IMG/VR virus record: IMGVR_UViG_3300028840_008185
Span: 186,001 to 250,000 of that record
Reading direction: 5' to 3' (one strand)
Length of the DNA: 64,000 nucleotides
Part shown: piece after piece, positions 1 through 18,100 of the stretch
Position numbering within the stretch: the stretch's first letter is position 1
How the letters are laid out: each line of letters begins with the position of its first letter
Notes under the pieces: generated by a model
The model's input: the letters and a program-made list of their open reading frames with translations, nothing else
Told to the model about the DNA's origin: nothing
Databases searched by the model: none
Position numbers and translations under genes: made by a program

Positions 1-38
1 CCACGCCGTGGCCACCATACTTGTAAACGCCCATCTTT

Positions 39-362
39 TCACCATCCTCTCTCGTGCAGTGCAGTCTCCAGCCGATTCCGCACGCCGTTCCAATAGTCCC
101 AATCCTTCGCCCAGTCTCTGCTCAGTTCCTCGATTGTCGAGTCACCCAGAGGGCTATAGGGATGGTAATTCCAGCGGTTGTCCTCCTCGCCAAAGTCCAC
201 GCCCATACCACCCTCGGTTAGGAGCTTCTGCGCCTCCTCTTTCGAGAGAACGTAGGGGGAGCAGCCGTTGAAGATCATCCAGTCCCAATGGTCAACGTCA
301 ACAGCCCAGACACCACCCGGATGGTTATGGTCACCAGCGAGAAAGATTTTCTTGTCGGACAT
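39..362 (-). CDS. hypothetical protein (107 aa)
   Basis: ORF with GGAGG SD; tightly packed with neighbours. Confidence 0.75.
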   Translation of the reverse strand: MSDKKIFLAGDHNHPGGVWAVDVDHWDWMIFNGCSPYVLSKEEAQKLLTEGGMGVDFGEEDNRWNYHPYSPLGDSTIEELSRDWAKDWDYWNGVRNRLETALHERGW

Positions 363-364
363 GC

Positions 365-703
365 TTATACCTCCTCGACGAAGAACTCGTTGTATATCGC
401 ATCATCATCCCAACGCCCTTGGGCATCAAGACAGGTTCGGCTGTAGAGCACAACCTCATGCTGGGGGAAGCGAGCCTTCCACTTGCGAGCCTGAGCCCTC
501 ATCTCCTCCAACGTCCCCGCGCAAGGTTGGTGCATGTCGCAAGCCCAGTCGAAGTCCTCGTCATTATCGGTCAACGACGGCAGGTGGCAAGGGGAAATAC
601 CATCAGCCTCAAAGGTGTAACGCTGACCGTAGAGCGCGTTATGAGCATGAGCCCACTTCGCCGTGCCCCAGGAATTCATGAGGTCTTCTTGTGTATACTT
701 CAT
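365..703 (-). CDS. hypothetical protein (112 aa)
   Basis: ORF, ATGA overlap with upstream gene, GGAGAG SD. Confidence 0.75.
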   Translation of the reverse strand: MKYTQEDLMNSWGTAKWAHAHNALYGQRYTFEADGISPCHLPSLTDNDEDFDWACDMHQPCAGTLEEMRAQARKWKARFPQHEVVLYSRTCLDAQGRWDDDAIYNEFFVEEV

Positions 704-957
704 TGTCTCTCCTCCCAGAGCTTTACGTGAGCGTCGTAGTAGTCCTCGCGGCGGTGGTGAGAAGTGAATTCCTTCCAGCCGTCCTGGTAGTCACGAGTCA
801 GAGCCTCTCGCCAGGTAATCTCTGGGGGCAGCACTGACCAGTCCACCTTGCCCATAGCGAAAGCACAGTCAGCAAGGCGCACAGCACCAAGTCCATGCCG
901 CGAGTAGCAGATCCCTGCGTGCTTCCATCCCAGCTTGTAGAGGTCAGAACGCATCAT
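700..957 (-). CDS. hypothetical protein (MMRSDLYKLGW...)
   Basis: Start reassigned to ATG 957 (AAGGAG SD, ATGA overlap with upstream stop). Confidence 0.7.
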   Translation of the reverse strand: MMRSDLYKLGWKHAGICYSRHGLGAVRLADCAFAMGKVDWSVLPPEITWREALTRDYQDGWKEFTSHHRREDYYDAHVKLWEERQ

Positions 958-1199
958 TTCTCCTTGATGTCGAACTTGTCGAGAAGGTCGCTGATCAGAC
1001 CATTGCAACCGTGCTCGCCCAAGTCATAGTCCACGAGAATGTCGTAGAGCTTGTTCCGTACTTCGTTGTCCTTGTCACACAAGCAGGACGCTCGCTTGCA
1101 GTCGAGGCAGATGTGCTTCGCTCCACACCAGCACTGTAGACGGGGAGCACTGCAATAGAGGCAGTTTCCCTGCTCGTCGCAAGTCGGGAACCTCATCAC
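954..1199 (-). CDS. small Cys-rich, probable zinc-binding protein
   Basis: CLYC, CWCG, CLDC, CLC motifs; stop/start overlaps. Confidence 0.65.
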   Translation of the reverse strand: MMRFPTCDEQGNCLYCSAPRLQCWCGAKHICLDCKRASCLCDKDNEVRNKLYDILVDYDLGEHGCNGLISDLLDKFDIKEK

Positions 1200-1351
1200 T
1201 CATCCCCGTCCTTCGCGACCTTGTGGTGGTCGCAGATGCACTTGTCACCCACCTTCTTCACCTTCCCCTTGGGGATGGCCTTCCGGCAGATGTAGCAGTA
1301 GGAACCGGACAGCTTGATTCTCAGGCGCTGCTTGTAGGGAACCAGCGGCAT
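1196..1351 (-). CDS. small zinc-finger-like protein (MPLVPYKQ..., 51 aa)
   Basis: GGAGG SD before ATG 1351; CYIC...CICDHH. Confidence 0.65.
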   Translation of the reverse strand: MPLVPYKQRLRIKLSGSYCYICRKAIPKGKVKKVGDKCICDHHKVAKDGDE

Positions 1352-1389
1352 ATCTTTCCTCCGTTGTTTTGGGTTTTGTCCTTCAAACT

Positions 1390-1553
1390 TGGTAGTACGA
1401 GCTGGATTCGAACCTGCATCTCCTAGGATGACTGCCCTCGTCACCACCCCTACCTCCTCCATCAGCTCAGTCCGCAGAACCAATGGGGGTTTCAGAGTAA
1501 TGGCTCAAACAGCCAGCGGACACCTAGGCGTCTTACCATTAGACCATCGCACA
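1390..1553 (-). ncRNA. tRNA-like RNA 1; anticodon loop replaced by a 97-nt insert
   Basis: Acceptor TGTGCGA/TCGTACT plus A-CCA; D arm GTCT-AATGGTA-AGAC; stem CCTAG/CTAGG; T arm GCAGG-TTCGAAT-CCAGC. Confidence 0.85.
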
Positions 1554-1558
1554 TATCT

Positions 1559-1699
1559 TGGCTGCGTGTGTTGGACTCGAACCAACATCTCCCGGAACAG
1601 CCATGCCTACCTCCTCACCTATGCACCCACGACATAGGCAAGGGCTCAGCATGACTGGTGGGTTTCCTCCGGGCGTCTTGCCAATTAGACCACCACGCC
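1559..1699 (-). ncRNA. tRNA-like RNA 2; anticodon loop replaced by a 73-nt insert
   Basis: Acceptor GGCGTGG/ACACGCA plus G-CCA; D arm GTCT-AATTGGCA-AGAC; stem CCCGG/CCGGG; T arm GTTGG-TTCGAGT-CCAAC. Confidence 0.85.
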
Positions 1700-1800
1700 G
1701 TATGTTGCTATACCTCAAAACGAAAACCAAAACACTTCATCGGACTCTCCGTTTCGCTGCCCCCCGACAATGGGCAACGCAGAAAGAGGTTTGAGGTTTG

Positions 1801-1830
1801 GGCTCTCCGAGCCCTGAAGCCCGGAGAGCC
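1801..1830 (-). terminator. GC-rich hairpin downstream of 1840..2070, possible terminator or processing site
   Basis: 9-bp inverted repeat ggctctccg/cggagagcc; no clear U-tract. Confidence 0.35.
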
Positions 1831-1839
1831 ACTGTTCCT

Positions 1840-2070
1840 TTACTCCTTGGCCTCCTTGCTCCCGATGACCGTCAGGTTCAGCCCGAGCTGGAGGGGAACC
1901 ACCACCCCGTCCACCACCACGCTCACCTTGCCGGTGGCGTAGTAGCCCACGGAACCGCTGCTGAACGAGCGGGGGCTGAGGTCGAAGGTCTGACCGGCGA
2001 CCTCCACCGTCATGGACTGCGCACCGCTGAGGAAATCCTTCTTCTTGATGGGACATGCTTTCTTGGCCAT
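1840..2070 (-). CDS. small conserved-looking beta-rich protein (MAKKACPIK...FSSGSVGYYATGK...LNLTVIGSK)
   Basis: AAGGAG SD before ATG 2070; strong coding bias. Confidence 0.8.
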   Translation of the reverse strand: MAKKACPIKKKDFLSGAQSMTVEVAGQTFDLSPRSFSSGSVGYYATGKVSVVVDGVVVPLQLGLNLTVIGSKEAKE

Positions 2071-2098
2071 TTTGCTTCTCCTTTGCTGTTGGTTGATA

Positions 2099-2524
2099 CT
2101 ACAGGTTGATGTCATCACAGCTTCTTACAGCCGTGAACGGAAAACCGTTATAGTCTCTTGGACCGAGTTGCGTATTATATTTGCTGATGCTATAGTTGCC
2201 CCCACGAACCACGACCCACATCACCTTGGACCGAACATACTCAAGTCCAGGGTTCTTCTCGGTGGGGTCAGTCTCGCAGAACTCACCAGTGAGGCCAGGG
2301 TTGGACTCCACGAAGTTCCAGAAGGAATCGCTCTCGGAGAGAACGTAGAACACATCGCCCTCTGGAATCTCCATGCTGATGCGCTGAAGGTCACCACGGC
2401 TCAAGTCACCCCAGCCGATCTTCTCACCCTTGGCGTTATACCAACCGCCGTTGTGGATGAAGTCATCAGCCCGCATCTGACCATCACCACGAAGTCCATA
2501 CTTCTCAAGGTCGCTTGTGTTCAT
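2099..2524 (-). CDS. hypothetical protein (141 aa)
   Basis: ORF packing, SD. Confidence 0.75.
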   Translation of the reverse strand: MNTSDLEKYGLRGDGQMRADDFIHNGGWYNAKGEKIGWGDLSRGDLQRISMEIPEGDVFYVLSESDSFWNFVESNPGLTGEFCETDPTEKNPGLEYVRSKVMWVVVRGGNYSISKYNTQLGPRDYNGFPFTAVRSCDDINL

Positions 2525-2525
2525 C

Positions 2526-2984
2526 TTATGGCTCCATCCTTGAGAGACAATCTGCCATCATCTCTCGGTGTTCGATCCAGTCTTGACTCCACACATGGTC
2601 GGTGAGAGGGCGACATCGATCCGCCAGAGCTTTCAGCCTCTTGGCGTGACCAAAGTTGCGGCTTCGTAGCTCCCACTTGGCCTCGCTGGCAATCTCATCC
2701 ACGCACCACTGGAAGTCTTTTCTCGCTTCCATCGCCTTGATGTGGTTGTCAACCTGACCATGACGCTGCATGATGCGGACCCTCTCCTGGTTGAGAGTGT
2801 CGAGCTTGTCGGAGACGCACATCAGGTTGCTCCAGCCATCACGATCCCTACTGGAGTTGCGCCCAGCGAGATACCACTCGCCGTCGTTACCAACCAGCAA
2901 GTCGCTGTGATCCTTCCAGTCGTAGACGACATGAGCACGAACCTCATCGATAGTCATGCAACTATCGGGATACAGATTGACCAT
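2526..2984 (-). CDS. hypothetical protein with coiled-coil segment
   Basis: GAGGAGGAGG SD before ATG 2984. Confidence 0.75.
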   Translation of the reverse strand: MVNLYPDSCMTIDEVRAHVVYDWKDHSDLLVGNDGEWYLAGRNSSRDRDGWSNLMCVSDKLDTLNQERVRIMQRHGQVDNHIKAMEARKDFQWCVDEIASEAKWELRSRNFGHAKRLKALADRCRPLTDHVWSQDWIEHREMMADCLSRMEP

Positions 2985-2998
2985 GGCTCCTCCTCCTC

Positions 2999-3301
2999 TT
3001 AGTAGTGACCTACGTAAGGCCACCGAGTCTCATTGATGATGTGGATGCTAGTCTCCCAGGTCGGTTGATCAAGCTCGTAGTCCCACTCGGAACCCTCACC
3101 AGTGCTCCGCTTCACCAACCTACCATCGGGCAGAATCCCAATCGCAAACTGGTGAGAAGCATTGTGGCCAACCCGGTGAAACTCCACTTCAACCGCCACG
3201 CCATCTACCACCATAACATCGGTGAGAATGTGGTAGTTGTGGTAGCGCTCCTTGGCGTCTTCAACGAGATGGTCAAATATTTCCTGGGAGGTTTCGCTCA
3301 T
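2999..3301 (-). CDS. hypothetical protein (100 aa)
   Basis: GAGGAG SD. Confidence 0.75.
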   Translation of the reverse strand: MSETSQEIFDHLVEDAKERYHNYHILTDVMVVDGVAVEVEFHRVGHNASHQFAIGILPDGRLVKRSTGEGSEWDYELDQPTWETSIHIINETRWPYVGHY

Positions 3302-3304
3302 TTG

Positions 3305-3463
3305 CTATCTCCTCTTGTCCGTTAGTTTCGGGGGCCACTGGCCAGCCACTCTGTCGTATCCCTGGAAAGGCCACACATCAGCTTCAAGAATGTCCAGAGC
3401 CTCACCCTCCAAGTCCACATCTTTCTCGGGGATAGGGACCAGCTTGTGTTTGGCCTTCTTCAT
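3305..3463 (-). CDS. hypothetical protein (MKKAKHKLVP..., 52 aa; not in ORF track)
   Basis: Hand translation fills the gap between neighbours exactly. Confidence 0.6.
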   Translation of the reverse strand: MKKAKHKLVPIPEKDVDLEGEALDILEADVWPFQGYDRVAGQWPPKLTDKRR

Positions 3464-3466
3464 CTC

Positions 3467-3856
3467 TCAGTCACCGCATTTCGGGCAGGCAGGAGTTATG
3501 TCCGTGAAACCATTGGGCAGTGGGTTATTGGCTCTGGCGACCCAATCACTCACATTCCCATACTTCTCCAACACCTCGGCTGGGGTCATGCACCACTTCG
3601 GGTACCTACAGTCGGAGCAGAGGTAACCGAGCGGTCTGCCGTAGCCAGCAACGATGTCACCGAGAGTGGTGCCGTCTATGAAGGGAAGGATGGCGTCTGG
3701 AAGGCACAAGAACTCTGGGCCATTCTTCACGTAGAGGGAGAGCCCAACCACAACATCCTGAGCCAGATCCTCTTGGTCGTGACCTCTGGTGCCGTACCTA
3801 TCATCGGACAGGATTTGCTGAATCATATCCCTAACGCCGCTTCTTGTGATGAGCAT
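3467..3856 (-). CDS. hypothetical protein with CxxC pairs (CSDC, CPKC)
   Basis: ORF packing; start may be MIQQ at 3826. Confidence 0.7.
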   Translation of the reverse strand: MLITRSGVRDMIQQILSDDRYGTRGHDQEDLAQDVVVGLSLYVKNGPEFLCLPDAILPFIDGTTLGDIVAGYGRPLGYLCSDCRYPKWCMTPAEVLEKYGNVSDWVARANNPLPNGFTDITPACPKCGD

Positions 3857-3859
3857 CTT

Positions 3860-4102
3860 CTACTCCTTGATGTGCATGACGTTGAACATCTGGAACTGCG
3901 GCGGACCCTCACCAACCCAGACGCCATCGAACGGTCGGAGCCAATCCTTCACAGCATCCTCCGTTCCTTCCACCGCGATGTGCTGCCCCGTGATGCGTCG
4001 GTTGCTGTCAGTCACAATGGTCACCTCTTCCCAATCGGCAAGCACCGTAATGTTATCCGGAACGGGAAGCATTTCTGGCATAGCAAGCAAGTGTATTTGC
4101 AT
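3860..4102 (-). CDS. hypothetical protein (MQIHLLAM...)
   Basis: AGGAG SD before ATG 4102. Confidence 0.7.
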   Translation of the reverse strand: MQIHLLAMPEMLPVPDNITVLADWEEVTIVTDSNRRITGQHIAVEGTEDAVKDWLRPFDGVWVGEGPPQFQMFNVMHIKE

Positions 4103-4106
4103 CGTC

Positions 4107-4307
4107 TTAGCTCCTATACCACCACGAGGCATCCACCGTGATTACTCCGTTCTCATCGGGGCCGTTCATCGGGCAGTGCTCAAAGCCACCGTGGAGATCC
4201 ACCAGGGCGTAAGCACGAGTCTTTGCGCCGCCCTTGGTGTCATGTCCATACTCCACTGTCTTCTTTGGTCCCCTGATGAAGACCACCCTGAACGGCTTGT
4301 TGCTCAT
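4107..4307 (-). CDS. hypothetical protein (MSNKPFRVV...)
   Basis: GGAGG SD before ATG 4307. Confidence 0.7.
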   Translation of the reverse strand: MSNKPFRVVFIRGPKKTVEYGHDTKGGAKTRAYALVDLHGGFEHCPMNGPDENGVITVDASWWYRS

Positions 4308-4352
4308 CGTCTTGTCTCCTCCGAAAGCTTCCAGTAGCGACATTTCAATCCC

Positions 4353-4772
4353 CTACTTGTTGTACCAGACTACGTGAGTGAACCGCTCATCCCAGAGCCC
4401 ACCACGGACATCACTTGGATGCACCTTGATGTCGGAGACTTGGAGATCCGTGGCATACTCCCCAAAGCCGTCGTCATCGATGAACATTCCATCGACACAG
4501 TGGCGGGTAAACTCCTCACGGGTCATGTGGTCGCCGTAGTCGGGAATGGACTCCCACTTGATGGGGTCGGGACCAACCTCCACCTTCAAGTTGGTCGCCT
4601 TGAGGAAGAACACAATCTCCTCATCCAGCCGCTTCCACAACTCCAGGGCTGAGGGCACACCACACTCCACCAAGTCCATCACAGACTCGCGCCGCTTCTC
4701 CAGCCACTCCACGGGGTTGATCTCCCCCTCTTTCCAGGTGTCCAGCAGATTCTCACGCAGTCTGTCTTTCAT
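4353..4772 (-). CDS. hypothetical protein (139 aa)
   Basis: ORF, ATGA overlap. Confidence 0.75.
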   Translation of the reverse strand: MKDRLRENLLDTWKEGEINPVEWLEKRRESVMDLVECGVPSALELWKRLDEEIVFFLKATNLKVEVGPDPIKWESIPDYGDHMTREEFTRHCVDGMFIDDDGFGEYATDLQVSDIKVHPSDVRGGLWDERFTHVVWYNK

Positions 4773-4882
4773 TGATCCTCAACCTTTCCCCGACAGGCTT
4801 TCTTGTCGGCTTCTTTCTTTTGGTCCGTATGTCTACCACTTCCGCCGTGCTGAAATGCTGCCACGGCGATATGGTTTCTCAC
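4769..4882 (-). CDS. small basic protein (MRNHIAVAAFQH..., 37 aa; not in ORF track)
   Basis: GTG start, open frame ends in an ATGA overlap with 4353..4772. Confidence 0.5.
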   Translation of the reverse strand: MRNHIAVAAFQHGGSGRHTDQKKEADKKACRGKVEDQ

Positions 4883-4883
4883 G

Positions 4884-5141
4884 TTAGGCTTTCTCTTTCT
4901 CCCACGGCGCTTTCGGCGGCGGTTCCTCTTCTTGGACATCTACCCATCGCTCCTCGTAGTGCTCAATGTCAAACCGCATGTCCCACATTTCAGCGCAACG
5001 CTGACACATCGTCTTGTCGTCACGGATGTAGGCATCGCAGAAAGTCTCAACTCCACAAACCATGCAGGGCTGAAGAGGCTTACGCTGCTTAGCTCGAATC
5101 TGCTCCCGACGCTTCTTGCGGTTGTGCTTGTCCCAAGGCAT
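4884..5141 (-). CDS. basic protein with CxxC zinc ribbon (CMVC...CQRC)
   Basis: Start at MPWD just after upstream stop. Confidence 0.7.
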   Translation of the reverse strand: MPWDKHNRKKRREQIRAKQRKPLQPCMVCGVETFCDAYIRDDKTMCQRCAEMWDMRFDIEHYEERWVDVQEEEPPPKAPWEKEKA

Positions 5142-5142
5142 A

Positions 5143-5304
5143 TTAGCGCAGCTTCTCGCCGTTGAGAGCACGGGCAGCCAGCCTCGCCCTGTCCATCACC
5201 ACGTCAGCCGTATACTCCACGTCGTGGTGATACTGGTCATACGCCGTGTAAGCACCGAACGTTGCCAGAGCCAATACAGTAACCACCAAAAACGTCTTGA
5301 ACAT
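5143..5304 (-). CDS. small membrane-anchored or secreted protein (MFKTFLVVTVLALA...)
   Basis: GAGGAG SD; N-terminal hydrophobic helix. Confidence 0.7.
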   Translation of the reverse strand: MFKTFLVVTVLALATFGAYTAYDQYHHDVEYTADVVMDRARLAARALNGEKLR

Positions 5305-5407
5305 GAGTCTCTCCTCTTGTTGTCTTGGCGCATTGCTCAAGCGCCTTTGGCGCAACCAGCTTGGTCCCAAGACCACCATGCTAGCTGGTTGCTGTGGTGC
5401 GGTGTTG

Positions 5408-5794
5408 CTAGAAACAACTTCGTAGTGCTCCAGTCCCGAAGCACATTGTCCCGTTCGTGTTTGTGTAGACGGTGGAGTTGCTGTCATAGGTCCAGTGGTT
5501 GTAGTCTTTGTCGGTGCCGTATGAAGTGCCATCGTCGTTGTAGGTGCCACTCCACATGCTTCCAGTGTTGAAGTTGTGACCCCTGACTTCGGTCCTGTCG
5601 CTGTACGTGTCCACGTCGTAGAAGTTGCCAGAGTTGTAGTCATACGACGTGCTGTAGAGCGGGGTCGTAGTGGTCGGCACGATGCTGTCACAGCCGATGC
5701 AGGTGGTGCTGAAGCCGTCAAGCCAGTCTGCCTGCACGTTGCCAGCACAGAACACCATTGCCACGAATGCCAGAATTGCCACGATTGCCTTCAT
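5408..5794 (-). CDS. secreted Ser/Thr/Tyr-rich protein
   Basis: Signal peptide MKAIVAILAFVAMVFCAGNVQA; AAGGAG SD. Confidence 0.8.
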   Translation of the reverse strand: MKAIVAILAFVAMVFCAGNVQADWLDGFSTTCIGCDSIVPTTTTPLYSTSYDYNSGNFYDVDTYSDRTEVRGHNFNTGSMWSGTYNDDGTSYGTDKDYNHWTYDSNSTVYTNTNGTMCFGTGALRSCF

Positions 5795-5830
5795 TTGTCT
5801 CTCTCCTTGTTGGTTGTTGACTCCGATATG

Positions 5831-6154
5831 TTACAGCCCCAAACAGGCTGCCGGTAGAATTCCGTTAACTATGTTGCTGCAACTATTATTACGAAGTGCG
5901 TCCAGACATGCATCCCACTCTTCCACTGTAGGCTGGTTTGTCACCATCTGCCCACACTTCCCAGCGTCCATGCAGCAACCACCCATGAACACATTTACGC
6001 ACTCGTCGAAGTTGACAGATGAGTTACACTCCATCACCCGCTGACAAGTTGCCATGCCACTCTCGTAACAGACATCTTGGGCTGTCTCCGGTAGCTCACC
6101 GCCACCACACGCCGAGACTGCGAACACCAGAAGAATTGCTACGATTGCCTTCAT
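5831..6154 (-). CDS. Cys-rich lipoprotein
   Basis: MKAIVAILLVFAVSA-C lipobox; multiple further Cys. Confidence 0.8.
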   Translation of the reverse strand: MKAIVAILLVFAVSACGGGELPETAQDVCYESGMATCQRVMECNSSVNFDECVNVFMGGCCMDAGKCGQMVTNQPTVEEWDACLDALRNNSCSNIVNGILPAACLGL

Positions 6155-6178
6155 CTATCTTCTCCCTGTTTGGGTTGT

Positions 6179-6502
6179 TTAGAACATCCTGATTTCACGG
6201 TTGCCAGACTCATCCACCTCATACACCTTCCAGAAGCCACTTGGGAACACCTCGTAAATTGCGTCGAGAATCTGCTCCCTTGAAGCGTCTACATCCACCT
6301 CAGCCACCTTGTCATCGGGACCGCACATCACTGGACCCAAGTAGACGTTGAAGAACCGCTTGCCAGTCTTAGCCCGAGATGCCGCCATCACATCGTCAGC
6401 CACCACACAACCCTTGGAGTAGGTCACACAACCGGGCTTCACCCAATGACCGTCACCATCCTGCGTGTAACCCTTGGCAATCAACTGGCTTCTCAACGTC
6501 AT
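6179..6502 (-). CDS. hypothetical protein (107 aa)
   Basis: GGAGG SD. Confidence 0.75.
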   Translation of the reverse strand: MTLRSQLIAKGYTQDGDGHWVKPGCVTYSKGCVVADDVMAASRAKTGKRFFNVYLGPVMCGPDDKVAEVDVDASREQILDAIYEVFPSGFWKVYEVDESGNREIRMF

Positions 6503-6505
6503 GGC

Positions 6506-6859
6506 TTACCTCCTCCAATCGGGGTTGATCTCATCACGCAGAGCGTGCCAGTCACCATCCAGCTCCACCAACCGCTCGCACTGTTCTTCCGTGAGCCAGT
6601 TGATGCTGCACTCCCAGGTCACGTCTCCACCCTTGTGGTAGGTGGTGCGAGTCACGAACCGACCGTCGAAGCCCCAGCACACCGTGGTCCGGTTGCCCCA
6701 CACATGGATACGCACCGACTTGTCCATTTCACCAGTGATCCTGCGAACGTCGTTGTTCCAGTAATACTCGACAACCTGGAAGCCCTGCTCTGGTGTGGGC
6801 ATACTGTCGAGAGCCGACTTGAGCGCGTCGATGACTGTGTTGATGGCGTCGTTATCCAT
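6506..6859 (-). CDS. hypothetical protein (117 aa)
   Basis: ORF with SD. Confidence 0.75.
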   Translation of the reverse strand: MDNDAINTVIDALKSALDSMPTPEQGFQVVEYYWNNDVRRITGEMDKSVRIHVWGNRTTVCWGFDGRFVTRTTYHKGGDVTWECSINWLTEEQCERLVELDGDWHALRDEINPDWRR

Positions 6860-6934
6860 GGCACGTAGCTCCGTTTTTGATACGGTGTTTGGTGGAATTT
6901 TTGCTGGTACTTAAGTCAGGATTTGGGTTTCTGG

Positions 6935-7135
6935 CTAGACCTTCTGAAGTCTAGTTCGCCGCAACTTCTTGGGTCGCTTGAACGTCACAATGTAGCAATC
7001 CTCATCGCGGTCCATCTCCACCACTTCCCACCCCTTTGAGCCATAACCATTGAGCCAGTTACGTAGCTTGTGGGTGTCGAGAATGATACGAGACTTGAAC
7101 ATGAACCGCTCTACAGTGTATTCCCACTTGGTCAT
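6935..7135 (-). CDS. DUF4177-like small protein
   Basis: KWEY...LNGYGSKGWEVV...FKR pattern typical of DUF4177. Confidence 0.7.
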   Translation of the reverse strand: MTKWEYTVERFMFKSRIILDTHKLRNWLNGYGSKGWEVVEMDRDEDCYIVTFKRPKKLRRTRLQKV

Positions 7136-7170
7136 TTAGCTCTCCGGTGACACGGTGTTTTGGCAAAAAC

Positions 7171-7316
7171 TGGTCTGGGGTCTGAGCACCCCTGGTCGGC
7201 GCTATTTCCCCAATGATTCCCCAGGTTTCCAGCGCCCCTCCTCGGTTGGGAAACCATAACTACTTGAAACAACAGACCATTCAGGTGGCGCCCAAGTCCA
7301 GGGGACACGGCGCCCA
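7171..7316 (-). ncRNA. candidate structured RNA with H-type pseudoknot
   Basis: Outer stem TGGTCTG/CAGACCA; crossing stems GGTTTCC/GGAAACC and GGCGCT/AGCGCC; extra hairpins; followed by GTTTTT. Confidence 0.5.
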
Positions 7317-7320
7317 TCCC

Positions 7321-7515
7321 TCAGTCCCAAGAGTTGTAGTAAGCGTTGTCCTCACCGTCAGACTCACGCTCCACAACGGGCGGGGAGGAGTGAGTGTTGT
7401 AGAAGTAGTAGTAGCAGAAGTAGTTGTGACACTCCCACATACCACCGATGCTGCACTCCATCCAGACCAGCGGAGTGTCGCACTCACCACAGACCTTGAC
7501 CATCTTCTTGCTCAT
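7321..7515 (-). CDS. small zinc-ribbon protein (MSKKMVKVCGEC...), Tyr-rich C-terminal half
   Basis: AAGGAGGAG SD directly after the mini-tRNA CCA; CGEC, CSIG, CHNYFC. Confidence 0.7.
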   Translation of the reverse strand: MSKKMVKVCGECDTPLVWMECSIGGMWECHNYFCYYYFYNTHSSPPVVERESDGEDNAYYNSWD

Positions 7516-7525
7516 CACTCCTCCT

Positions 7526-7577
7526 TGGTGAACCTTTGTGGACTCGAACCACATACTTCCAAATACAAGTAAGGTTC
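7526..7577 (-). ncRNA. 52-nt minimal tRNA-like RNA lacking an anticodon arm
   Basis: Perfect 7-bp acceptor GAACCTT/AAGGTTC plus A-CCA; hairpin ACTT-GTATTTGG-AAGT; canonical T arm TGTGG-TTCGAGT-CCACA. Confidence 0.8.
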
Positions 7578-7789
7578 ATTACTTAGCCGCCGCTGACTCA
7601 ACCGAAACACGAGGGGTAGATGCCGTTCATGTTGTCTCTCTTGGTGAGGTGGTGGTTGTCAGTCGCGGACCTTTAGGGTGCATTTCAAAGCCCCACTGAC
7701 TCTCCGGGCACCCATCTCCCAGAGCATCTTCTTCTCTCTCCGGTTGCTCCATGTTTACTTCATCTGCTTTTTCCTCCAGTACTGACTCA

Positions 7790-7809
7790 AGGGGCCCCTA
7801 GGGGCCCCT
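7790..7809. repeat. 20-bp perfect palindrome, (AGGGGCCCCT)x2
   Basis: Read directly; lies just past the stop of 7818..8027. Confidence 0.9.
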
Positions 7810-7817
7810 CTTGCTAC

Positions 7818-8027
7818 TTACTTCATCTTCTCCTTGACTTGAGCCAACATCGAGTCCATGGCCAGCGTGTAGACGGCTAACTTCTCGCACATCGCATCCA
7901 CTTCGCTCTTTTGCTCCGATTGCTCTTGCTCTTGGTGCATCAGCCTCCACAACCGCCGCTCACTTGCGTCTCGAACATGATGGTAGCGTGGGGCTGACCT
8001 TCCGCCTCGTGGTCTACACATGGCCAT
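7818..8027 (-). CDS. hypothetical coiled-coil protein (MAMCRPRGG...)
   Basis: GGAGGT SD; start overlaps upstream stop. Confidence 0.65.
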   Translation of the reverse strand: MAMCRPRGGRSAPRYHHVRDASERRLWRLMHQEQEQSEQKSEVDAMCEKLAVYTLAMDSMLAQVKEKMK

Positions 8028-8197
8028 CAGCCCACCTCCAACTTCTTGCCGCGCTCCTTGGCGACATGCAGCGCACCGCGCTGGTCGGTGCCGCGCACCT
8101 TCATCTTCTGCACTGACCCACGACGGCGGGAAGGGGCAAACACCTTGACCTCCACCCACTCACCGTGGACCAGCTTCTTCTCGATACGATAGCTCAT
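8027..8197 (-). CDS. small basic protein (MSYRIEKK...)
   Basis: AGGAGG SD before ATG 8197. Confidence 0.7.
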   Translation of the reverse strand: MSYRIEKKLVHGEWVEVKVFAPSRRRGSVQKMKVRGTDQRGALHVAKERGKKLEVG

Positions 8198-8210
8198 TGT
8201 TCCTCCTGTT

Positions 8211-8429
8211 TTAGAGGTGGCTGAAACCAACGCCGCCGGGACAAATGGTCCGACCGCGCTGCCCAGAAGTAACCCTCTCGATGAGGGCGTTGTAGGTTGA
8301 CTCGGGACAACGAACCTTCCCGTCGTGGTCAACGGGGAGGTAGATGAAGACAGTGTGGTTGACACCACGGCACCAGATGGTAACTGCCGTGAGCCTGTAA
8401 GACAGACGACCCTTCCAAGTCTTACGCAT
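8211..8429 (-). CDS. hypothetical protein (MRKTWKGR...)
   Basis: AAGGAG SD; packing. Confidence 0.65.
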   Translation of the reverse strand: MRKTWKGRLSYRLTAVTIWCRGVNHTVFIYLPVDHDGKVRCPESTYNALIERVTSGQRGRTICPGGVGFSHL

Positions 8430-8430
8430 G

Positions 8431-8703
8431 CTACTCACTCTCCTTCCCCACCCTCAACCAACCCAGCTCATAAGCTCTCTTGGTGAGGTGGACTAGAAGC
8501 CTGGTGTCTCCCTTGGTCGATGCCATGAACTGAGCACGGAGCAAGAGGTGGTAGAAGAACACCAAGTCTTGTGGATACTTACCAGACCTGGTGACCCTTC
8601 TTCTCTGAAGTCCACGCCTCCTACGCCACACTGCATTGCTCAGTGCGTCTCCTACTTCCCACATGAAGGTGGGGTCTTGCACAGACACAGAGAAGGGATA
8701 CAT
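8431..8703 (-). CDS. basic hypothetical protein (MYPFSVSVQ...)
   Basis: AAGGAG SD before ATG 8703; upstream extension in the track is non-coding-like. Confidence 0.7.
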   Translation of the reverse strand: MYPFSVSVQDPTFMWEVGDALSNAVWRRRRGLQRRRVTRSGKYPQDLVFFYHLLLRAQFMASTKGDTRLLVHLTKRAYELGWLRVGKESE

Positions 8704-8724
8704 GACGTTGCTCCTTTGTTGGCC

Positions 8725-8763
8725 TCTCATATACACACGTAGTATATACGTGTGCATATGAGA
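8725..8763 (-). repeat. 17-bp hairpin (one G-U pair on the minus strand), 5-nt loop
   Basis: tctcatat-a-cacacgta / tacgtgtg-c-atatgaga. Confidence 0.8.
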
Positions 8764-8800
8764 AGGGGCTCTGTAGGAGCCCTTGTGAGGAGGGGAGTGT

Positions 8801-9007
8801 TTAGCTGTTGTTGAGGATGGTGAGGGCGAAGTCCCTGGCCTGACCCAGCTCCTTGGCCTTGGGGTCGTTGGGGTCGATGATGCCGGTGGCGTTGGTGAGT
8901 GCAGCGTCGAGGCGCTGCAAGGCCACCTTGGCGAGGGGGGTGTTGAGGTTGTTGAGGCGGGGGTAGAGGGCCTGCACTGCCTTGCGGATGTTGTGCAACA
9001 TTGACAT
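8801..9007 (-). CDS. small helical protein (MSMLHNIRK..., 68 aa), first gene of the high-GC block
   Basis: CAGGAG SD before ATG 9007; strong codon bias. Confidence 0.8.
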   Translation of the reverse strand: MSMLHNIRKAVQALYPRLNNLNTPLAKVALQRLDAALTNATGIIDPNDPKAKELGQARDFALTILNNS

Positions 9008-14742: not shown

Positions 14743-15180
14743 TCATTCCTCTGAGTAAGCTAGAACATTCACGGGGAGGTTACTAACATATTCCAACCAC
14801 TTATAGATTTTGCTCAGTAGCATTGGAAAATACTTCATACTCATCCTTGGAAGATCTACAACGTAGTATCTGTCTTTCTTGCCAGCAGGTTTGGCCATTT
14901 TTCCAAAATATACATCTCCAAGCTCGCTTGGCCATACCATCTTTAGTCTGAATGATTTCCCATCTCCTTCTAGCTCAAGAGTAGCAGATAGATATTCATC
15001 CTCTTTCGCGCCCGCAACTGGCCAGAAGGTTGTCTCCAGTGTTATGAATTCACGCTCGGCAGGCTTTCCCTCAGTGGGACCAAACCATTTGAATGGGAAG
15101 TTCTTTATCTTATCCGGAGTGAAATATCTGAATATGCTCCCCTTATCAGCCTCTTCGTGCTTCTTCCTGAATTCGCTCAT
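14743..15180 (-). CDS. hypothetical protein with WPSxLGD domain paralogous to polyprotein segments
   Basis: LKMVWPSELGDVYFG. Confidence 0.8.
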   Translation of the reverse strand: MSEFRKKHEEADKGSIFRYFTPDKIKNFPFKWFGPTEGKPAEREFITLETTFWPVAGAKEDEYLSATLELEGDGKSFRLKMVWPSELGDVYFGKMAKPAGKKDRYYVVDLPRMSMKYFPMLLSKIYKWLEYVSNLPVNVLAYSEE

Positions 15181-18100
15181 CTCGCGTCTCTCTTCTCGAA
15201 CTCATGCAAATCTATTAGTTGCTTTTCAGTCAAGCCTCTTTTCTGTTGCTCTTCGTAATCTTGGGGATACTCAAGAGGGAAAACCTCAGCTTCCTCTCCC
15301 TTTTCTTCCGGCGGCGTCACCTTCTCTGTTGGAAACTCAATCACCTTGGCGGCTCGTCTGGAAAGCTGAAACCCATCACTTATCTCTTCCAAATATTCTC
15401 CCGGCAGCGTGCCACTTTTAATTGTCACAAACGCATGAGGGGTGCCCTGAAATAGAAGGCGGGGGCTCGTGCGTTTGAATCCCTTGGCTTTACTAAGCTC
15501 TTCGAGAAGGGAGCCTTGCTCTACTTCGCGCTGGCTCCGTGGCTTTTCCTCTACAATACTAACACCTTCAATCAGTCCATCCGCTAGAGCACGGCTGTAA
15601 TCAACTGCATACAGCTTTCTGCGCTTTGCGAATGCTTGTTGTTCAGGATCATCTTGTGGTCCTATTGGCCGTAACAATAACGAAACCACACGAGAACCAC
15701 CAGGGCCTCGTAGCTTTTCAAGAGCTTCAATAATTTCTTCTGTAGTTAGAGATTCGGCTTCTTTTCCAAGCTCTTCTGCCGCCCTTCCACGATATTTTTC
15801 TAATACTTCAGGCATATGAGACAAACTAGCGGGAGTCTTCAAGCCCTCTTTTATTAGATCTACTCCTGAGGGTCCGTAGTGATATAGCATAGTGGGCACA
15901 GCGGCTCGTTTAGATATAGCAAAAGAACCCTCGGACTTCATCTTTTTTGATAGGGCGCCTATCTTGCTAATAACTGGCAACAATTTCCTCAAGACACCAT
16001 CAAGCTCGCTATAAGATCCTTCTTTAGCGAATATCATTGTGGGCCCGTCTTCTATGGCATCAAGCTCCATATCCCCAAGTTTAGATGGCCAGTGCAACTC
16101 TAAGCGGTAATCGCCTTCTCTTATGGGTGCGTCCGGTTCCAATACCTTGGAGCGCAGCTTTATGGTGAGTAAGAACCAGCCGTATGCGACCTTGGGCATA
16201 AATTCTTCCTCATAGTGCGTTGGAATATCTGGGAAGCTGGTGCTTAACTCAAGCGTGTATCGAGGGTAACCAGTCTCGGAGTAATCATCAGCCTGAACAT
16301 CCCAACCCTCTATTTTGCTTGGTGGAATTAGCAGCCTGAACTCTCTTTCGTAGACATCATCCTCACCCGCCCTTTTTGATAAAGGGATGCCACCTCCTCC
16401 TCCAGCAAACTTCTCCATCACCATTCTCTTAGCCACATCTTTCGTAAGCTCTTTGCCTTCCTCAGCCAACCCATCCTGAAGCTCAAGCAGATACTTTCCA
16501 ACCTGACCGATGATTGGCCCAGGTTTTACATCAAGGATTTCCATAATTTCTTTGCCGTTAAGTATGGGTTTCCTGGCCACGGGAATCTCTTTGGTCTGCT
16601 CGATGCGCTTTCTTAGTTCTGGGATGTAGTTGCTGGGAGGCATGTTCCCTAGAGCATCGGCCTCCGCAAGATCCAGCACATCATCAACCATGCCTTCGCC
16701 CACGTCGCGCACGAACTTCCTAAGAGCTTTTGGCGAGGCTTTTTCAAGGGAGTGTGGGCGCATGTGGTTCTCGACCATGGATTTCACGCGCTGTATAGTT
16801 TTTCCGTCAAACTTGAGTCTGCGCAAGATGGCCTCAGCAATTTCTGCGCCCGCTTTCTCATGGCCCAAGAACTGAATCTTGTCGCCTATGAACTCTTGGG
16901 TCTCAGGTTTGCCGATGTCGTGGAGTAGGGCAGCCAGCTGCCCGTGAATCGTAGGTGGGGCGTTCGAGAGGACTAATAGAGTGTGCTTATAGACATCTCC
17001 TTCCTGGTGGCTGCGCTTGTCGTGCTTGACACCAATGAGCCCATAGATTTCGGGAAGGACTAAGGGAAGGAGGTTGGTCGCTTTCATTATTTTAATGGCC
17101 TGGGCGGTTTTGCCAAGCTTCATTACTTTTGTGAGTTCTTCTTGTATGCGTTCCCAAGAGATTTTCTGTATCTCTTCGGCGTTTCTCCTGACTGATCTGA
17201 GCATAAACATAGGAATCTTCCAGTCATATTTACATTGGAAGCGAATAAGACGAAGCATGCGCAGTGGGTCATTAGAGAACATCGTGTCGGGATTCACAGC
17301 CGGGTGGCCTCTTAGAATGCCCTTTTCTATATCCTCTTTGCTTGTGCCCGTCAGGTCTTCTATTTCGCCCGATGTGAGGTCTCTGAGCAGCATGTTCACC
17401 GTGAAGTCTCTACGCTCGATGTCATCCTTGAGAGGCGCGTAAACCGTCTCACGCTGCCTTGAGGAGGGATCGGGGTAGTGTTCCTTCTGCGTGTCCGCAA
17501 TATCGATTTCAGCGCCTGTCGTAGCATATCGCTGGCCCTCATAAGTTATATCATCCTTGAAGGCGACGTGCCAGATTGGGTAGGCTGCTCCTAGCTGGCG
17601 AGGGGTTGAGGTCTGCTCGGGGAAACTGTCAGCTATAAACTTGCAGAGGGCTTCAGCCCCGCCACGCATTTCCACAACTATGTCGAGGTCTTTGGACTCC
17701 ATGCCCATCAGCTTGTCTCGCTCGTAGCCTCCTACGGAGAAGGCTTTACCGGCGAAAGGGGTGCCCGGTAGTATCCGGAGTAGAAGTCTTTGAACCTCCT
17801 CCTCCGCGAGCGCAGCTCGCTTTGACAGTTTGACATCACTGGCTGGCTGATCTGCTTTCGCACCGGCTCGTTGCTCCGCCCACCTTATTAGACCATCCAT
17901 GGATCTGGCTGCACTTTCAGCACTCATACCTATAACTGTGCCAGCCTCCTCGGGAACTTTGTATAGAAAGTCTTCTTCTGGATAGTTTCTACCCATACCG
18001 GCGAAGGCTCTATTATCCAAATCCATGGGGTCGCCGGATGGTCTTTCATTTTTTTCGTAGATCGCATATGGCGGCGGCTCAAATCCAGGCTCACTAACTT

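What the first reader, a model, noticed from the sequence alone, without database searches (positions are those of the whole stretch)
1390..1699. Tandem tRNA-scaffold RNAs whose anticodon loop is replaced by a homologous 73-97-nt structured domain
Seen: two elements 5 nt apart each have acceptor stem, D arm, anticodon-stem-like helix, T arm with TTCGA and encoded CCA, but no 7-nt anticodon loop. The inserts share three motifs in the same order (GAAACCCnC, CTGAGC, GAGGAGGTAGG) while stems differ compensatorily (CCTAG/CTAGG vs CCCGG/CCGGG). Insert 1 has GTCCGC/GCGGAC and TGGCT/AGCCA helices. Insert 2 has AGTCATGC/GCATGGCT, CCTATG/CATAGG and a possible ACCCAC/GTGGGT pseudoknot. They are too short for group I introns, have a D stem and no Ala G3-U70 (so not tmRNA), and I found no splice site that restores a canonical anticodon loop. 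Inference: an undescribed tRNA-mimic ncRNA class.
Basis: partly seen in the sequence, partly recalled or inferred. Interest (0 to 1): 0.9.

Follow-up and report, generated by a model that had tools for sequence, protein, structure and literature searches.

The report
Phage tRNA-shaped RNAs lacking an anticodon
A giant bacteriophage carries two adjacent genes for RNAs that look like complete tRNAs, except that the anticodon loop is replaced by a long self-pairing hairpin; related phages have the same design, so it appears to be a small, undescribed family of non-decoding tRNA-derived RNAs whose job is still unknown.

Summary
On the minus strand, E2 (1699-1559, 141 nt) and E1 (1553-1390, 164 nt) lie 5 nt apart. 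Each has a complete tRNA body with encoded CCA but no 7-nt anticodon loop. Default ARAGORN and Rfam 15 find nothing.

The window is part of a huge phage (contigs up to 452 kb). Two divergent homologues sit at the same locus in related phages (L073, L083). Their inserts are AT-rich and unrelated in sequence, but the architecture is the same:
- a 6-bp "anticodon" stem;
- a 6-8-nt 5' bulge;
- one end-to-end irregular hairpin of 60-97 nt, whose apical loop is complementary to that bulge.

Support:
- Covariation is strong: 15 of 30 pairs change on both sides, and 90.6% of cells pair against 28-45% in slid controls.
- The hairpins fold better than shuffles (z -2.3 to -5.7).
- Position 1:72 is mismatched in all four.
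- No single excision restores a canonical anticodon loop.

It is therefore not a canonical tRNA, a group I or BHB intron tRNA, a tmRNA or a YrlA RNA. The most likely reading is a non-decoding, tRNA-scaffolded structured RNA. Function and expression are untested. The family is narrow: a model built from the four members finds no others in 2.2 Mb of held DNA.

The parts
1559..1699 (-). E2: tRNA-shaped RNA, 141 nt, encoded CCA at 1561-1559
   Evidence: Sequence read, coordinates checked. ARAGORN -i calls a tRNA body with a 64-nt 'intron'. Covariance model R1 scores it 121.4 bits.
1390..1553 (-). E1: tRNA-shaped RNA, 164 nt, encoded CCA at 1392-1390
   Evidence: R1 scores it 158.9 bits.
1668..1673 (-). 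E2 6-bp 'anticodon' stem, 5' strand CCCGGA (3' strand UCCGGG at 1596-1591)
   Evidence: In the four-sequence alignment, 4 of the 6 pairs change on both sides and 100% of cells pair.
1523..1528 (-). E1 6-bp 'anticodon' stem, 5' strand CCUAGG (3' strand CCUAGG at 1427-1422)
1658..1663 (-). E2 bulge/leader ACCCAC (S1 5' strand), complementary to the apical loop GUGGGU at 1630-1625
   Evidence: S1 helix: 4 of 8 pairs change on both sides.
1598..1657 (-). E2 long irregular hairpin (S2, 60 nt) with the S1 3' strand in its 7-nt apical loop
   Evidence: Constrained fold (61-nt stretch 1597-1657) gives -33.9 kcal/mol, z = -5.68, with 0 of 300 shuffles as good.
1516..1521 (-). E1 bulge/leader GUCCGC (S1 5' strand), complementary to the apical loop GCGGAC at 1475-1470
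   Evidence: MAFFT aligns these with S1 of the homologues. There are two compensatory double changes relative to GCCCAC/GUGGGC.
1429..1515 (-). E1 long irregular hairpin (S2, 87 nt) with the S1 3' strand in its 8-nt apical loop
   Evidence: Constrained fold (88-nt stretch 1428-1515) gives -39.2 kcal/mol, z = -4.14, with 0 of 300 shuffles as good.
1570..1586 (-). E2 T arm GUUGG UUCGAGU CCAAC
1401..1417 (-). E1 T arm GCAGG UUCGAAU CCAGC (A.A at 51:63)
   Evidence: A 51:63 mismatch also occurs in L083 and in the Planctomycete tRNA-Thr.
1843..2070 (-). Conserved upstream neighbour: gene for a 76-aa protein. A paralogue precedes the ordinary tRNA-Lys of the same phage.
   Evidence: Homologues P0003 and P0004 precede the E-type RNAs in L073 and L083.
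1801..1830 (-). Conserved hairpin GGCUCUCCG..CGGAGAGCC after the small-protein gene, followed (1700-1795) by a ~100-nt structured spacer
   Evidence: The same stem sequence occurs in L073, L083 and L084. The fold of 1700-1832 has z = -4.62.

Best explanation
E1 and E2 are tandem paralogues of a small, lineage-specific family of phage RNAs derived from a Gln/Thr-type tRNA.

Shown:
- The body keeps everything needed for the tRNA L-shape.
- The anticodon loop is gone. The anticodon stem is lengthened to 6 bp and runs into a 6-8-nt 5' bulge followed by one long irregular hairpin (60-97 nt).
- The apical loop of that hairpin is complementary to the bulge.
- These RNAs cannot decode.

Inferred:
- They are co-transcribed with the flanking minus-strand genes.
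- The tRNA body acts as a natural 'tRNA scaffold': RNase P and RNase Z/CCA enzymes cut the RNA out precisely, and the fold protects it.
- The functional part is the inserted domain, displayed on the end of the anticodon arm.
- The mature RNA then works in trans, as a tRNA-shaped ligand or decoy for a tRNA-binding host or phage protein.

The target is unknown.
For: - tRNA body: recognised by ARAGORN -i. U8, A14, G18G19, A21, G26, A15:U48, the T-loop UUCGA and G53-C61 are all present.
- Ancestry: the bodies are 65-75% identical to Planctomycete tRNA-Thr(CGU) and Actinomycetota tRNA-Gln(UUG).
- Homologues with unrelated insert sequence but the same architecture lie at the syntenic position in related phages: L073 2555-2729 and L083 702-864.
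- Covariation: 30 pairs, 90.6% of cells paired against 28-45% when the partner is slid, 15 pairs with changes on both sides, and 0 of 500 shuffles reach the observed values. The S1 loop-bulge helix changes GCCCAC/GUGGGC to GUCCGC/GCGGAC.
- In all four members the domain after the bulge folds as a single end-to-end hairpin with the bulge complement in the apical loop: z = -4.1, -5.7, -2.3 and -4.4.
- No excision restores a canonical anticodon loop.
- 1:72 is unpaired in 4 of 4, and CCA is encoded in 3 of 4.
- Model R1 separates members (121-159 bits) from every ordinary or insert-bearing tRNA in 2.2 Mb of held DNA (62 bits or less).
- No promoter or terminator lies next to the elements, which fits co-transcription and processing.
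Against: - There are no expression data. RNase P/Z processing, CCA status, stability and any partner are inferences.
- Only four distinct sequences from one phage lineage were found, so the covariation statistics rest on few independent events.
- The S1 helix alone is only modestly better than shuffles (p = 0.13, 0.03, 0.05).
- An intramolecular loop-bulge pairing is sterically awkward for a hairpin of 25-40 bp unless it bends sharply.
- One natural variant (L008) carries a G-to-A change that breaks a pair in the E1 hairpin.
- Each element sits 11-35 nt upstream of the next gene's start codon, so a purely cis role is possible.
- A relative has a true group I intron in its tRNA-Lys, so interrupted tRNAs do occur in this lineage.
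Confidence: 0.5

Rival explanations
1. Cis-acting tRNA-like punctuation or leader element. The tRNA body only serves to direct RNase P/Z cleavage of the polycistronic transcript, or to regulate the gene just downstream. The RNA itself would have no trans function.
For: - The elements end 35, 17 and 11 nt before the next start codon in the window, L073 and L083. In L083 the CCA abuts the Shine-Dalgarno sequence.
- The same region holds other acceptor/T-arm-only elements: window 7526-7577 and L001 7320-7455.
- Gemmataceae genomes carry a tRNA-like leader with the same 5' half upstream of a gene whose product starts like a CCA-adding enzyme.
Against: - The downstream genes are not homologous among the three loci.
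- A cleavage signal needs only the acceptor/T-arm minihelix. It would not explain retention of the D arm, the tertiary nucleotides, or a 60-97-nt hairpin with covarying loop-bulge complementarity.
Confidence: 0.2
2. Intron-containing tRNA genes with a new kind of small intron, removed by an unknown ribozyme or protein pathway (for example double-strand cleavage of the long hairpin followed by ligation) to give decoding tRNAs.
For: - ARAGORN -i reports them as tRNA-Asp(GUC) and tRNA-Ser(GCU) with introns.
- The tRNA-Lys orthologue of a relative holds a genuine group I intron (Rfam 60.1 bits).
- Other phage and bacterial tRNA genes have 45-90-nt inserts, and some leave a canonical loop intact, such as L219/L266 tRNA-Met.
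Against: - No single excision yields U33 plus a purine at 37 in any of the four. E2 and L073 never acquire U33.
- The stem is closed by a sixth Watson-Crick pair at 32:38 in all four.
- There is no Rfam intron or ribozyme match.
- All four members carry the insert. The insert sequence has diverged completely while its architecture is kept, which is unlike a mobile intron.
- No RNA ligase or splicing endonuclease turned up among the window ORFs scanned.
Confidence: 0.15
3. RNA partner of a ribonucleoprotein of the tmRNA or Y RNA (YrlA) type. The tRNA-like module would recruit tRNA-handling factors while the long helix binds a dedicated protein.
For: - The layout is a tRNA-like module plus a long helix leaving from the anticodon position, as in tmRNA and YrlA.
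- M. smegmatis YrlA is cut by RNase P and receives CCA (PMC4201824).
- Jumbo phages can encode Ro/TROVE proteins with a tRNA-like partner (PMC7824862).
Against: - ARAGORN tmRNA mode and Rfam are negative.
- A full D stem is present, there is no G3.U70 and there is no tag reading frame.
- The topology is permuted relative to YrlA, and the GNCGAAN0-1G motif is absent.
- No TROVE or SmpB-like domain appeared in the ORFs scanned. Not all ORFs were scanned.
Confidence: 0.1
4. Decaying tRNA pseudogenes whose anticodon loops were hit by an insertion; no function.
For: - Imperfections are present: 1:72 mismatches, G7.A66 in E2, and T-stem mismatches in E1, L073 and L083.
- The element is absent from one close relative, where two protein genes occupy the site (L081).
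Against: - Compensatory changes keep every helix, including the insert helices, across sequences whose inserts share no primary sequence.
- The tertiary nucleotides are intact.
- The 1:72 mismatch is itself conserved in 4 of 4.
Confidence: 0.05

Closest known systems
Engineered 'tRNA scaffold' RNAs (recombinant RNAs inserted in place of the anticodon loop of a tRNA so that the cell processes and protects them; recalled from my own knowledge of Ponchon and Dardel's method, not checked here)
   Same: Identical design: an intact acceptor, D and T arms, a lengthened anticodon stem, and a foreign structured RNA in place of the anticodon loop.
   Different: Those are man-made. Here the design is natural and conserved in a phage lineage, and the inserted module has its own conserved loop-bulge complementarity.
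tmRNA (Rfam RF00023)
   Same: A tRNA-like acceptor/T-arm end with CCA, a long helix leaving where the anticodon arm would be, and possible pseudoknotted content.
   Different: E1 and E2 have a complete D stem, no G3.U70, no tag ORF and only 141-164 nt. ARAGORN tmRNA mode and Rfam do not detect them.
Bacterial and phage Y RNA-like YrlA (PMC4201824)
   Same: A tRNA-mimicking D/T-arm module joined to a long helix at the anticodon position. One member is processed by RNase P and CCA-adding enzyme.
   Different: YrlA has its 5' and 3' ends in the long helix and a closed 'acceptor'. E1 and E2 are the reverse. The Ro-binding motif GNCGAAN0-1G is absent, and no Ro60/TROVE gene was seen nearby.
tRNA genes with group I introns in the anticodon loop (bacteria, phages; Rfam RF00028)
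   Same: An insertion in the anticodon region of a phage tRNA-type gene. A relative of this phage has a real example in tRNA-Lys (L094).
   Different: The inserts are 71-106 nt between the 6-bp stem strands (real group I introns are over 200 nt). There is no group I core match, and excision cannot restore an anticodon loop.
   Same: A bulge loop and a hairpin loop of one RNA are mutually complementary, yet poorly placed to pair within one molecule. In pRNA this drives oligomerisation.
   Different: There is no sequence or structural homology. pRNA is not tRNA-like. Oligomerisation of E1/E2 is only an inference.

Membership tests
Canonical tRNA (Rfam RF00005 / ARAGORN default) | Cloverleaf body: 7-position acceptor stem, D arm with G18G19, T arm with UUCRA, and tertiary-interaction nucleotides | tested here: met
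   All elements are present in E1, E2, L073 and L083.
Canonical tRNA (Rfam RF00005 / ARAGORN default) | 5-bp anticodon stem closed by a 7-nt loop with U33 and an anticodon; detected by standard tools | tested here: not met
   Default ARAGORN finds 0 genes in the window. There is no RF00005 hit. The stem is 6 bp and leads into a 71- or 95-nt domain.
tRNA gene with group I intron | Group I catalytic core (Rfam RF00028) within the insert | tested here: not met
   No hit even at E<=10 over 1200-1900. As a positive control, L094 scores 60.1 bits.
Any intron-containing tRNA | Removal of one contiguous segment restores a canonical anticodon arm | tested here: not met
   Exhaustive enumeration over the four members: no product has both U33 and R37. 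E2 and L073 never have U33.
Archaeal-type BHB intron tRNA | A bulge-helix-bulge motif (3-nt bulge, 4-bp helix, 3-nt bulge) at the junctions, and an archaeal host | tested here: not met
   The junction is a 6-bp stem, then a single 5' single-stranded stretch of 7-10 nt (the bulge with its linker) and 0-3 nt on the 3' side. The genome has bacterial-phage content: sigma-70 factor, amidase with a peptidoglycan-binding domain, ThyX and PhoH.
tmRNA | A tRNA-like domain without a D stem, G3.U70, a tag ORF ending in a stop codon, and detection by ARAGORN -m or Rfam RF00023 | tested here: not met
   Position 3:70 is C-G or U-A.
YrlA / bacterial Y RNA | 5'-proximal GNCGAAN0-1G Ro-binding motif; RNA ends in the long helix; acceptor closed by a loop | tested here: not met
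   The motif is absent from the four sequences and the topology is the reverse (definition from PMC4201824).
YrlA / bacterial Y RNA | Ro60 (TROVE) gene within about 4 kb on the same strand | tested here: inconclusive
   No TROVE hit among the neighbouring ORFs scanned. Not every ORF of the window, or of the 450-kb genome, was scanned.
E-type family defined here (model R1) | tRNA body, 6-bp stem, 5' bulge, and an end-to-end hairpin whose apical loop complements the bulge | tested here: met
   E1, E2, L073 and L083 score 121-159 bits. The next best sequences score 62 bits or less.

The most novel reading that the evidence does not exclude
Phages have evolved their own 'tRNA scaffold'. The host's tRNA maturation machinery would cut out and protect a non-decoding RNA whose displayed hairpin self-associates through orthogonal bulge-loop pairs (E1 GUCCGC/GCGGAC, E2 ACCCAC/GUGGGU). 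The resulting tRNA-shaped particle would trap or redirect a tRNA-binding host factor during infection, for example an anti-phage tRNA nuclease, a CCA-adding or repair enzyme, or a ribosomal tRNA site.
Probability: 0.25. Interest if true: 0.85.

Novelty: new variant of a known kind. Interest (0 to 1): 0.62.

Why it matters
tRNA mimicry is a recurring strategy (tmRNA, Y RNAs, viral 3' tRNA-like structures), but a complete tRNA body carrying a conserved structured module in place of the anticodon loop has not been catalogued: Rfam 15 has no matching family and the literature searches found none.

If these RNAs are expressed and stable, three things follow:
- They would be a natural counterpart of the tRNA-scaffold trick used in the laboratory.
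- They would be a new handle on how huge phages manipulate tRNA-centred host processes.
- They would warn that tRNA finders run with intron options mis-annotate such genes as tRNA-Asp or tRNA-Ser.

The same phage region holds several other tRNA-derived oddities, so this lineage may be a rich source of such RNAs.

Tried and rejected
1. Real hits came only from the same phage (IMG/VR 318 kb; JGI contigs of 452 kb and 143 kb, 99.9% identical). All other hits were chance matches in coding DNA or Shine-Dalgarno regions.
2. A scan for the tRNA body plus a gap found only the window itself.
3. A protein-anchored search in IMG/VR found only the window itself. The anchor worked only through the large protein collection and Logan contigs.
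4. Kink-turn or box C/D reading of CUGA...UGAUGG/UGAGGA: rejected. In the four-member model the internal loops are near-symmetric (GAGC opposite ACGA or AGGUA) with no 3-nt bulge, and the motif is not kept in L083.
5. Shine-Dalgarno plus start codon (a tmRNA-like or mRNA-like reading) of GGAGGU-N5-AUG/GUG: rejected. The purine run is not conserved in L073 or L083, and the frame runs through the T arm.
6. Hammerhead, HDV, pistol or twister readings: no Rfam support, and the helix order does not fit.
7. Antisense target in the 72.7 kb available: no match beyond chance.
8. A conserved downstream protein partner: the downstream genes are unrelated.
9. The upstream 76-aa protein: confident all-beta model (pLDDT 92) but no Pfam, PHROG or PDB relative. 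It is common in Planctomycetota chromosomes away from tRNAs, so it gives a host hint but no function.
10. L118/L141/L179 and other insert-bearing phage tRNA genes looked similar at first (GGAGGAG run). They lack the bulge-loop design and score 62 bits or less with R1, so they are not members.

Full report
**Observation.** Read on the minus strand, 1699-1559 (E2, 141 nt) and 1553-1390 (E1, 164 nt) are two tRNA-shaped elements separated by 5 nt. Both have an acceptor stem, U8, a GUCU/AGAC D stem with a GG-containing loop, G26, a 4-nt variable loop AGAU, a T arm with UUCGAAU or UUCGAGU, a discriminator base and an encoded CCA. Where the anticodon loop should be, the stem continues to a sixth Watson-Crick pair (E1 CCUAGG/CCUAGG, E2 CCCGGA/UCCGGG). 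It then opens into a 95- or 71-nt domain. Default ARAGORN finds no tRNA or tmRNA in the whole window. Rfam 15 finds nothing at gathering score, and only noise at E<=10 over 1200-1900. ARAGORN with introns allowed recognises both bodies, calling tRNA-Asp(GUC) with a 90-nt intron and tRNA-Ser(GCU) with a 64-nt intron, but the loops it proposes are non-canonical.

**Source and surroundings.** The window is part of IMG/VR contig 3300028840_008185 (318 kb). The same phage, 99.9% identical, occurs in JGI contigs of 452.6 and 143 kb. All genes run on the minus strand. The content is that of a huge bacteriophage:
- DnaB-like helicase, ribonucleotide reductase and a tail protein;
- ThyX, thymidylate kinase and an amidase with a peptidoglycan-binding domain;
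- a sigma-70-type factor, PIN-PhoH and SpoVR/DUF444;
- a 1504-aa fusion of SET, topoisomerase IB, CCA-adding and HD domains.

No RNA ligase or splicing endonuclease was found among the ORFs scanned. E2 and E1 lie in a GC-rich (0.54-0.56 against about 0.45), small-ORF region that also carries ordinary tRNA-Lys and tRNA-Met. No promoter or terminator signal flanks them.

**Homologues.** Exact-motif scans recovered only this phage. The gene immediately upstream encodes a 76-aa protein, and a paralogue of it precedes the phage's tRNA-Lys. Homologues of this protein in Logan assemblies led to related phages. There the same position is occupied by a tRNA-shaped RNA of the same kind: L073 2555-2729 (identical in four further contigs) and L083 702-864. 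L086 breaks off at the start of another copy. A close relative lacks the element altogether (L081). The inserts of L073 and L083 are AT-rich and share no primary sequence with E1 or E2.

**Architecture.** MAFFT aligned E1's GUCCGC/GCGGAC with ACCCAC/GUGGGU (E2), GGCCCAC/GUGGGCC (L073) and AUGCCCAU/GUGGGCAU (L083). All four members share this plan:
- a 6-bp stem;
- 0-4 nt;
- a 6-8-nt 5' bulge (S1 5' strand);
- a domain that folds, from its first to nearly its last nucleotide, as one irregular hairpin whose apical loop is the S1 3' strand.

With that loop held unpaired, the hairpins are far more stable than dinucleotide shuffles: z = -4.1, -5.7, -2.3 and -4.4, with 0, 0, 8 and 0 of 300 shuffles as good.

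On the alignment, the five alignable helices (acceptor, D, 6-bp stem, S1, T) give the following:
- 90.6% of cells are paired, against 28-45% when partners are slid.
- 15 of 30 pairs change on both sides.
- 0 of 500 shuffles reach the observed values.
- The 6-bp stem changes on both sides at 4 of 6 positions.
- S1 changes on both sides at 4 of 8 positions.
- Position 1:72 is never paired (U.U once, G.A three times).

S1 taken alone is only modestly above chance in each sequence (p = 0.13, 0.03, 0.05); its weight comes from recurring at the same place with compensatory changes. A covariance model built from the alignment (R1) scores the four members at 121-159 bits and the truncated L079 copy at 73 bits. 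Everything else in 2.2 Mb of fetched phage and bacterial DNA scores 62 bits or less, including hundreds of tRNAs and other insert-bearing tRNA genes.

**What it is not.**
- *Canonical tRNA:* there is no anticodon loop.
- *Intron-bearing tRNA of a known kind:* there is no group I core, whereas the relative L094 scores 60.1 bits for a real one in tRNA-Lys. There is no bulge-helix-bulge and the host is bacterial. Exhaustive enumeration shows that no single excision gives a 5-bp stem and a 7-nt loop with both U33 and a purine at 37. E2 and L073 never gain U33.
- *tmRNA:* there is a full D stem, no G3.U70, no tag frame and no detection.
- *YrlA:* the topology is reversed and the Ro-binding motif is absent.
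- *Pseudogene:* every helix is maintained by compensatory change while the insert sequence has turned over completely.

**Ancestry.** The 5' half matches tRNA-Gln(UUG) of Actinomycetota and tRNA-Thr(CGU) of Planctomycetes. Body identity to these is 65-75%, similar to the identity among the four members themselves (67-77%). The upstream protein family is common in Planctomycetota chromosomes, which points to a planctomycete host. This is an inference.

**How it most likely works.** The shown and inferred parts are as follows.
- *Shown:* a conserved, non-decoding tRNA body with a conserved bulge-hairpin module.
- *Inferred, processing:* the elements are co-transcribed with their neighbours and released by RNase P and RNase Z/CCA enzymes. 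The body acts as a natural tRNA scaffold that gives exact ends and stability.
- *Inferred, module:* the displayed module is the working part. The loop-bulge complementarity co-varies, so the two strands pair with each other and not with an outside target. Within one molecule this would need a sharp fold-back of a 25-40-bp hairpin. Between molecules it would give symmetric dimers or chains, whatever the hairpin length. E1 and E2 carry different, non-cross-pairing S1 sequences.
- *Guess:* a trans role as a tRNA-shaped ligand or decoy. I put 0.5 on this overall model.

The main rivals, with my confidence in each, are:
- a purely cis punctuation or leader role (0.2), supported by the 11-35-nt distance to the next start codon but weakened by the unrelated downstream genes;
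- a new kind of intron (0.15);
- a tmRNA- or Y-RNA-like RNP partner (0.1);
- a pseudogene (0.05).

**Novelty and limits.** Rfam 15 has no matching family, and four literature searches found no description. The kind of thing (a tRNA-derived mimic) is known; this architecture is not. The family is narrow, with four distinct sequences from one phage lineage. Expression is untested. The model could not be run on whole public collections.

Noticed in passing
window 7526-7577 (-); also L084 1014-1093 (+): A mini tRNA-like element: a 7-bp acceptor stem (GAACCUU/AAGGUUC), a small D-like hairpin with GG, a perfect T arm (UGUGG UUCGAGU CCACA), discriminator A and CCA, but no anticodon arm at all. A comparable element lies in a related phage contig. 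ARAGORN and Rfam do not call either.
   Followed up: partly
L001 7320-7455 (-), i.e. about 1.3 kb before window position 1: Another tRNA-like RNA of the same phage: a 7-bp acceptor stem and a T arm (UUCGAAU) enclosing two non-tRNA hairpins. It has no D arm and overlaps a probably spurious 141-aa ORF.
   Followed up: partly
L083 575-681 (+); L073 about 2455-2550 (+); L080: In the related phages, the space between the small-protein gene and the E-type RNA holds a 'multi-T-arm' RNA. A 13-bp closing stem encloses five hairpins, two of them with T-loop-like loops (UUCAAUU, UUCGACU); the L083 fold has z = -5.8. In the window the same position (1700-1795) holds a different ~100-nt structured spacer (z = -4.6 together with the hairpin), and L085/L086 hold a third kind.
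   Followed up: partly
window 1801-1830 (-); L073, L083, L084 just after the small-protein gene: A hairpin with the stem GGCUCUCCG(A/G)G...CUCGGAGAGCC, conserved in sequence, with a variable loop and no U tract. The paralogous module has GGGGGAGCCC UUCG GGGCUCCCCC before tRNA-Lys. It may be a processing or protein-binding site.
   Followed up: no
L094 2417-2731 (+), L095 809-1123 (+): In a relative, the tRNA-Lys(UUU) orthologue is interrupted between positions 34 and 35 by a genuine group I intron (Rfam RF00028, 60.1 bits). The window phage's own tRNA-Lys is intron-less.
   Followed up: yes
L254 about 1326-1450 (+) (Gemmataceae CJuql4, LR594584.1); L278 5469-5563 (+) (Gemmata MAG); similar starts in L218/L225 and L229: A tRNA-like leader with the same 5' half as the E-type body: acceptor strand, GUCU D arm, and a CAGGG/CCCUG stem with a 41-nt loop. 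It has no T arm. A hairpin follows, and then a gene whose product begins MTEREFALDVV...GGCVRDE, which looks like a CCA-adding enzyme. This may be a tRNA-mimic regulator of cca. It is not in Rfam.
   Followed up: partly
L266 838-994 (+) (Puniceicoccaceae genome) and L219 769-925 (+) (viral contig): A tRNA-Met(CAU) gene with an 82-nt structured insert between positions 31 and 32. The anticodon loop UUCAUAA is intact on the 3' side. Rfam's tRNA model still scores it 46.7 bits, and there is no group I match.
   Followed up: no
L118 / L141 / L179, L209, L127, L196-type, L111, L114, L126, L063 (viral contigs): Many unrelated phage contigs carry tRNA-type genes with oversized anticodon arms or 24-90-nt inserts. 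Some could be true small introns: in L111, a tRNA-Gln would regain CUUUGGA after removal of about 45 nt. None has the bulge-loop design, and all score 62 bits or less with model R1.
   Followed up: partly
window 15177-19691 (-): A 1504-aa ORF that fuses a SET domain, a eukaryotic-type topoisomerase IB core, a CCA-adding/poly(A) polymerase head with its RNA-binding domain, and an HD domain. This is an unusual combination.
   Followed up: no
window 1843-2070 (-) and L001 2832-3071 (-): A 76-80-aa protein family with no Pfam or PHROG hit. The AlphaFold model is confident (pLDDT 92, one helix plus a beta sheet) and has no significant PDB match. There are 357 relatives at E<=0.001, many in Planctomycetota chromosomes. 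In this phage lineage the gene always sits just upstream of tRNA or tRNA-like genes.
   Followed up: partly
window 1-9000 plus about 7.7 kb upstream (L001): A roughly 17-kb island of higher G+C (0.51-0.57, against 0.43-0.46 in the rest of the window). It is packed with ORFs under 150 aa that have no database matches, and it holds all the tRNA and tRNA-like genes.
   Followed up: no
L008 (Ga0180438) copy of E1: The only difference in E1/E2 among the three near-identical phage copies is a G-to-A change (UGAUGG to UGAUAG). It turns a C-G pair of the inner E1 hairpin into C.A.
   Followed up: yes
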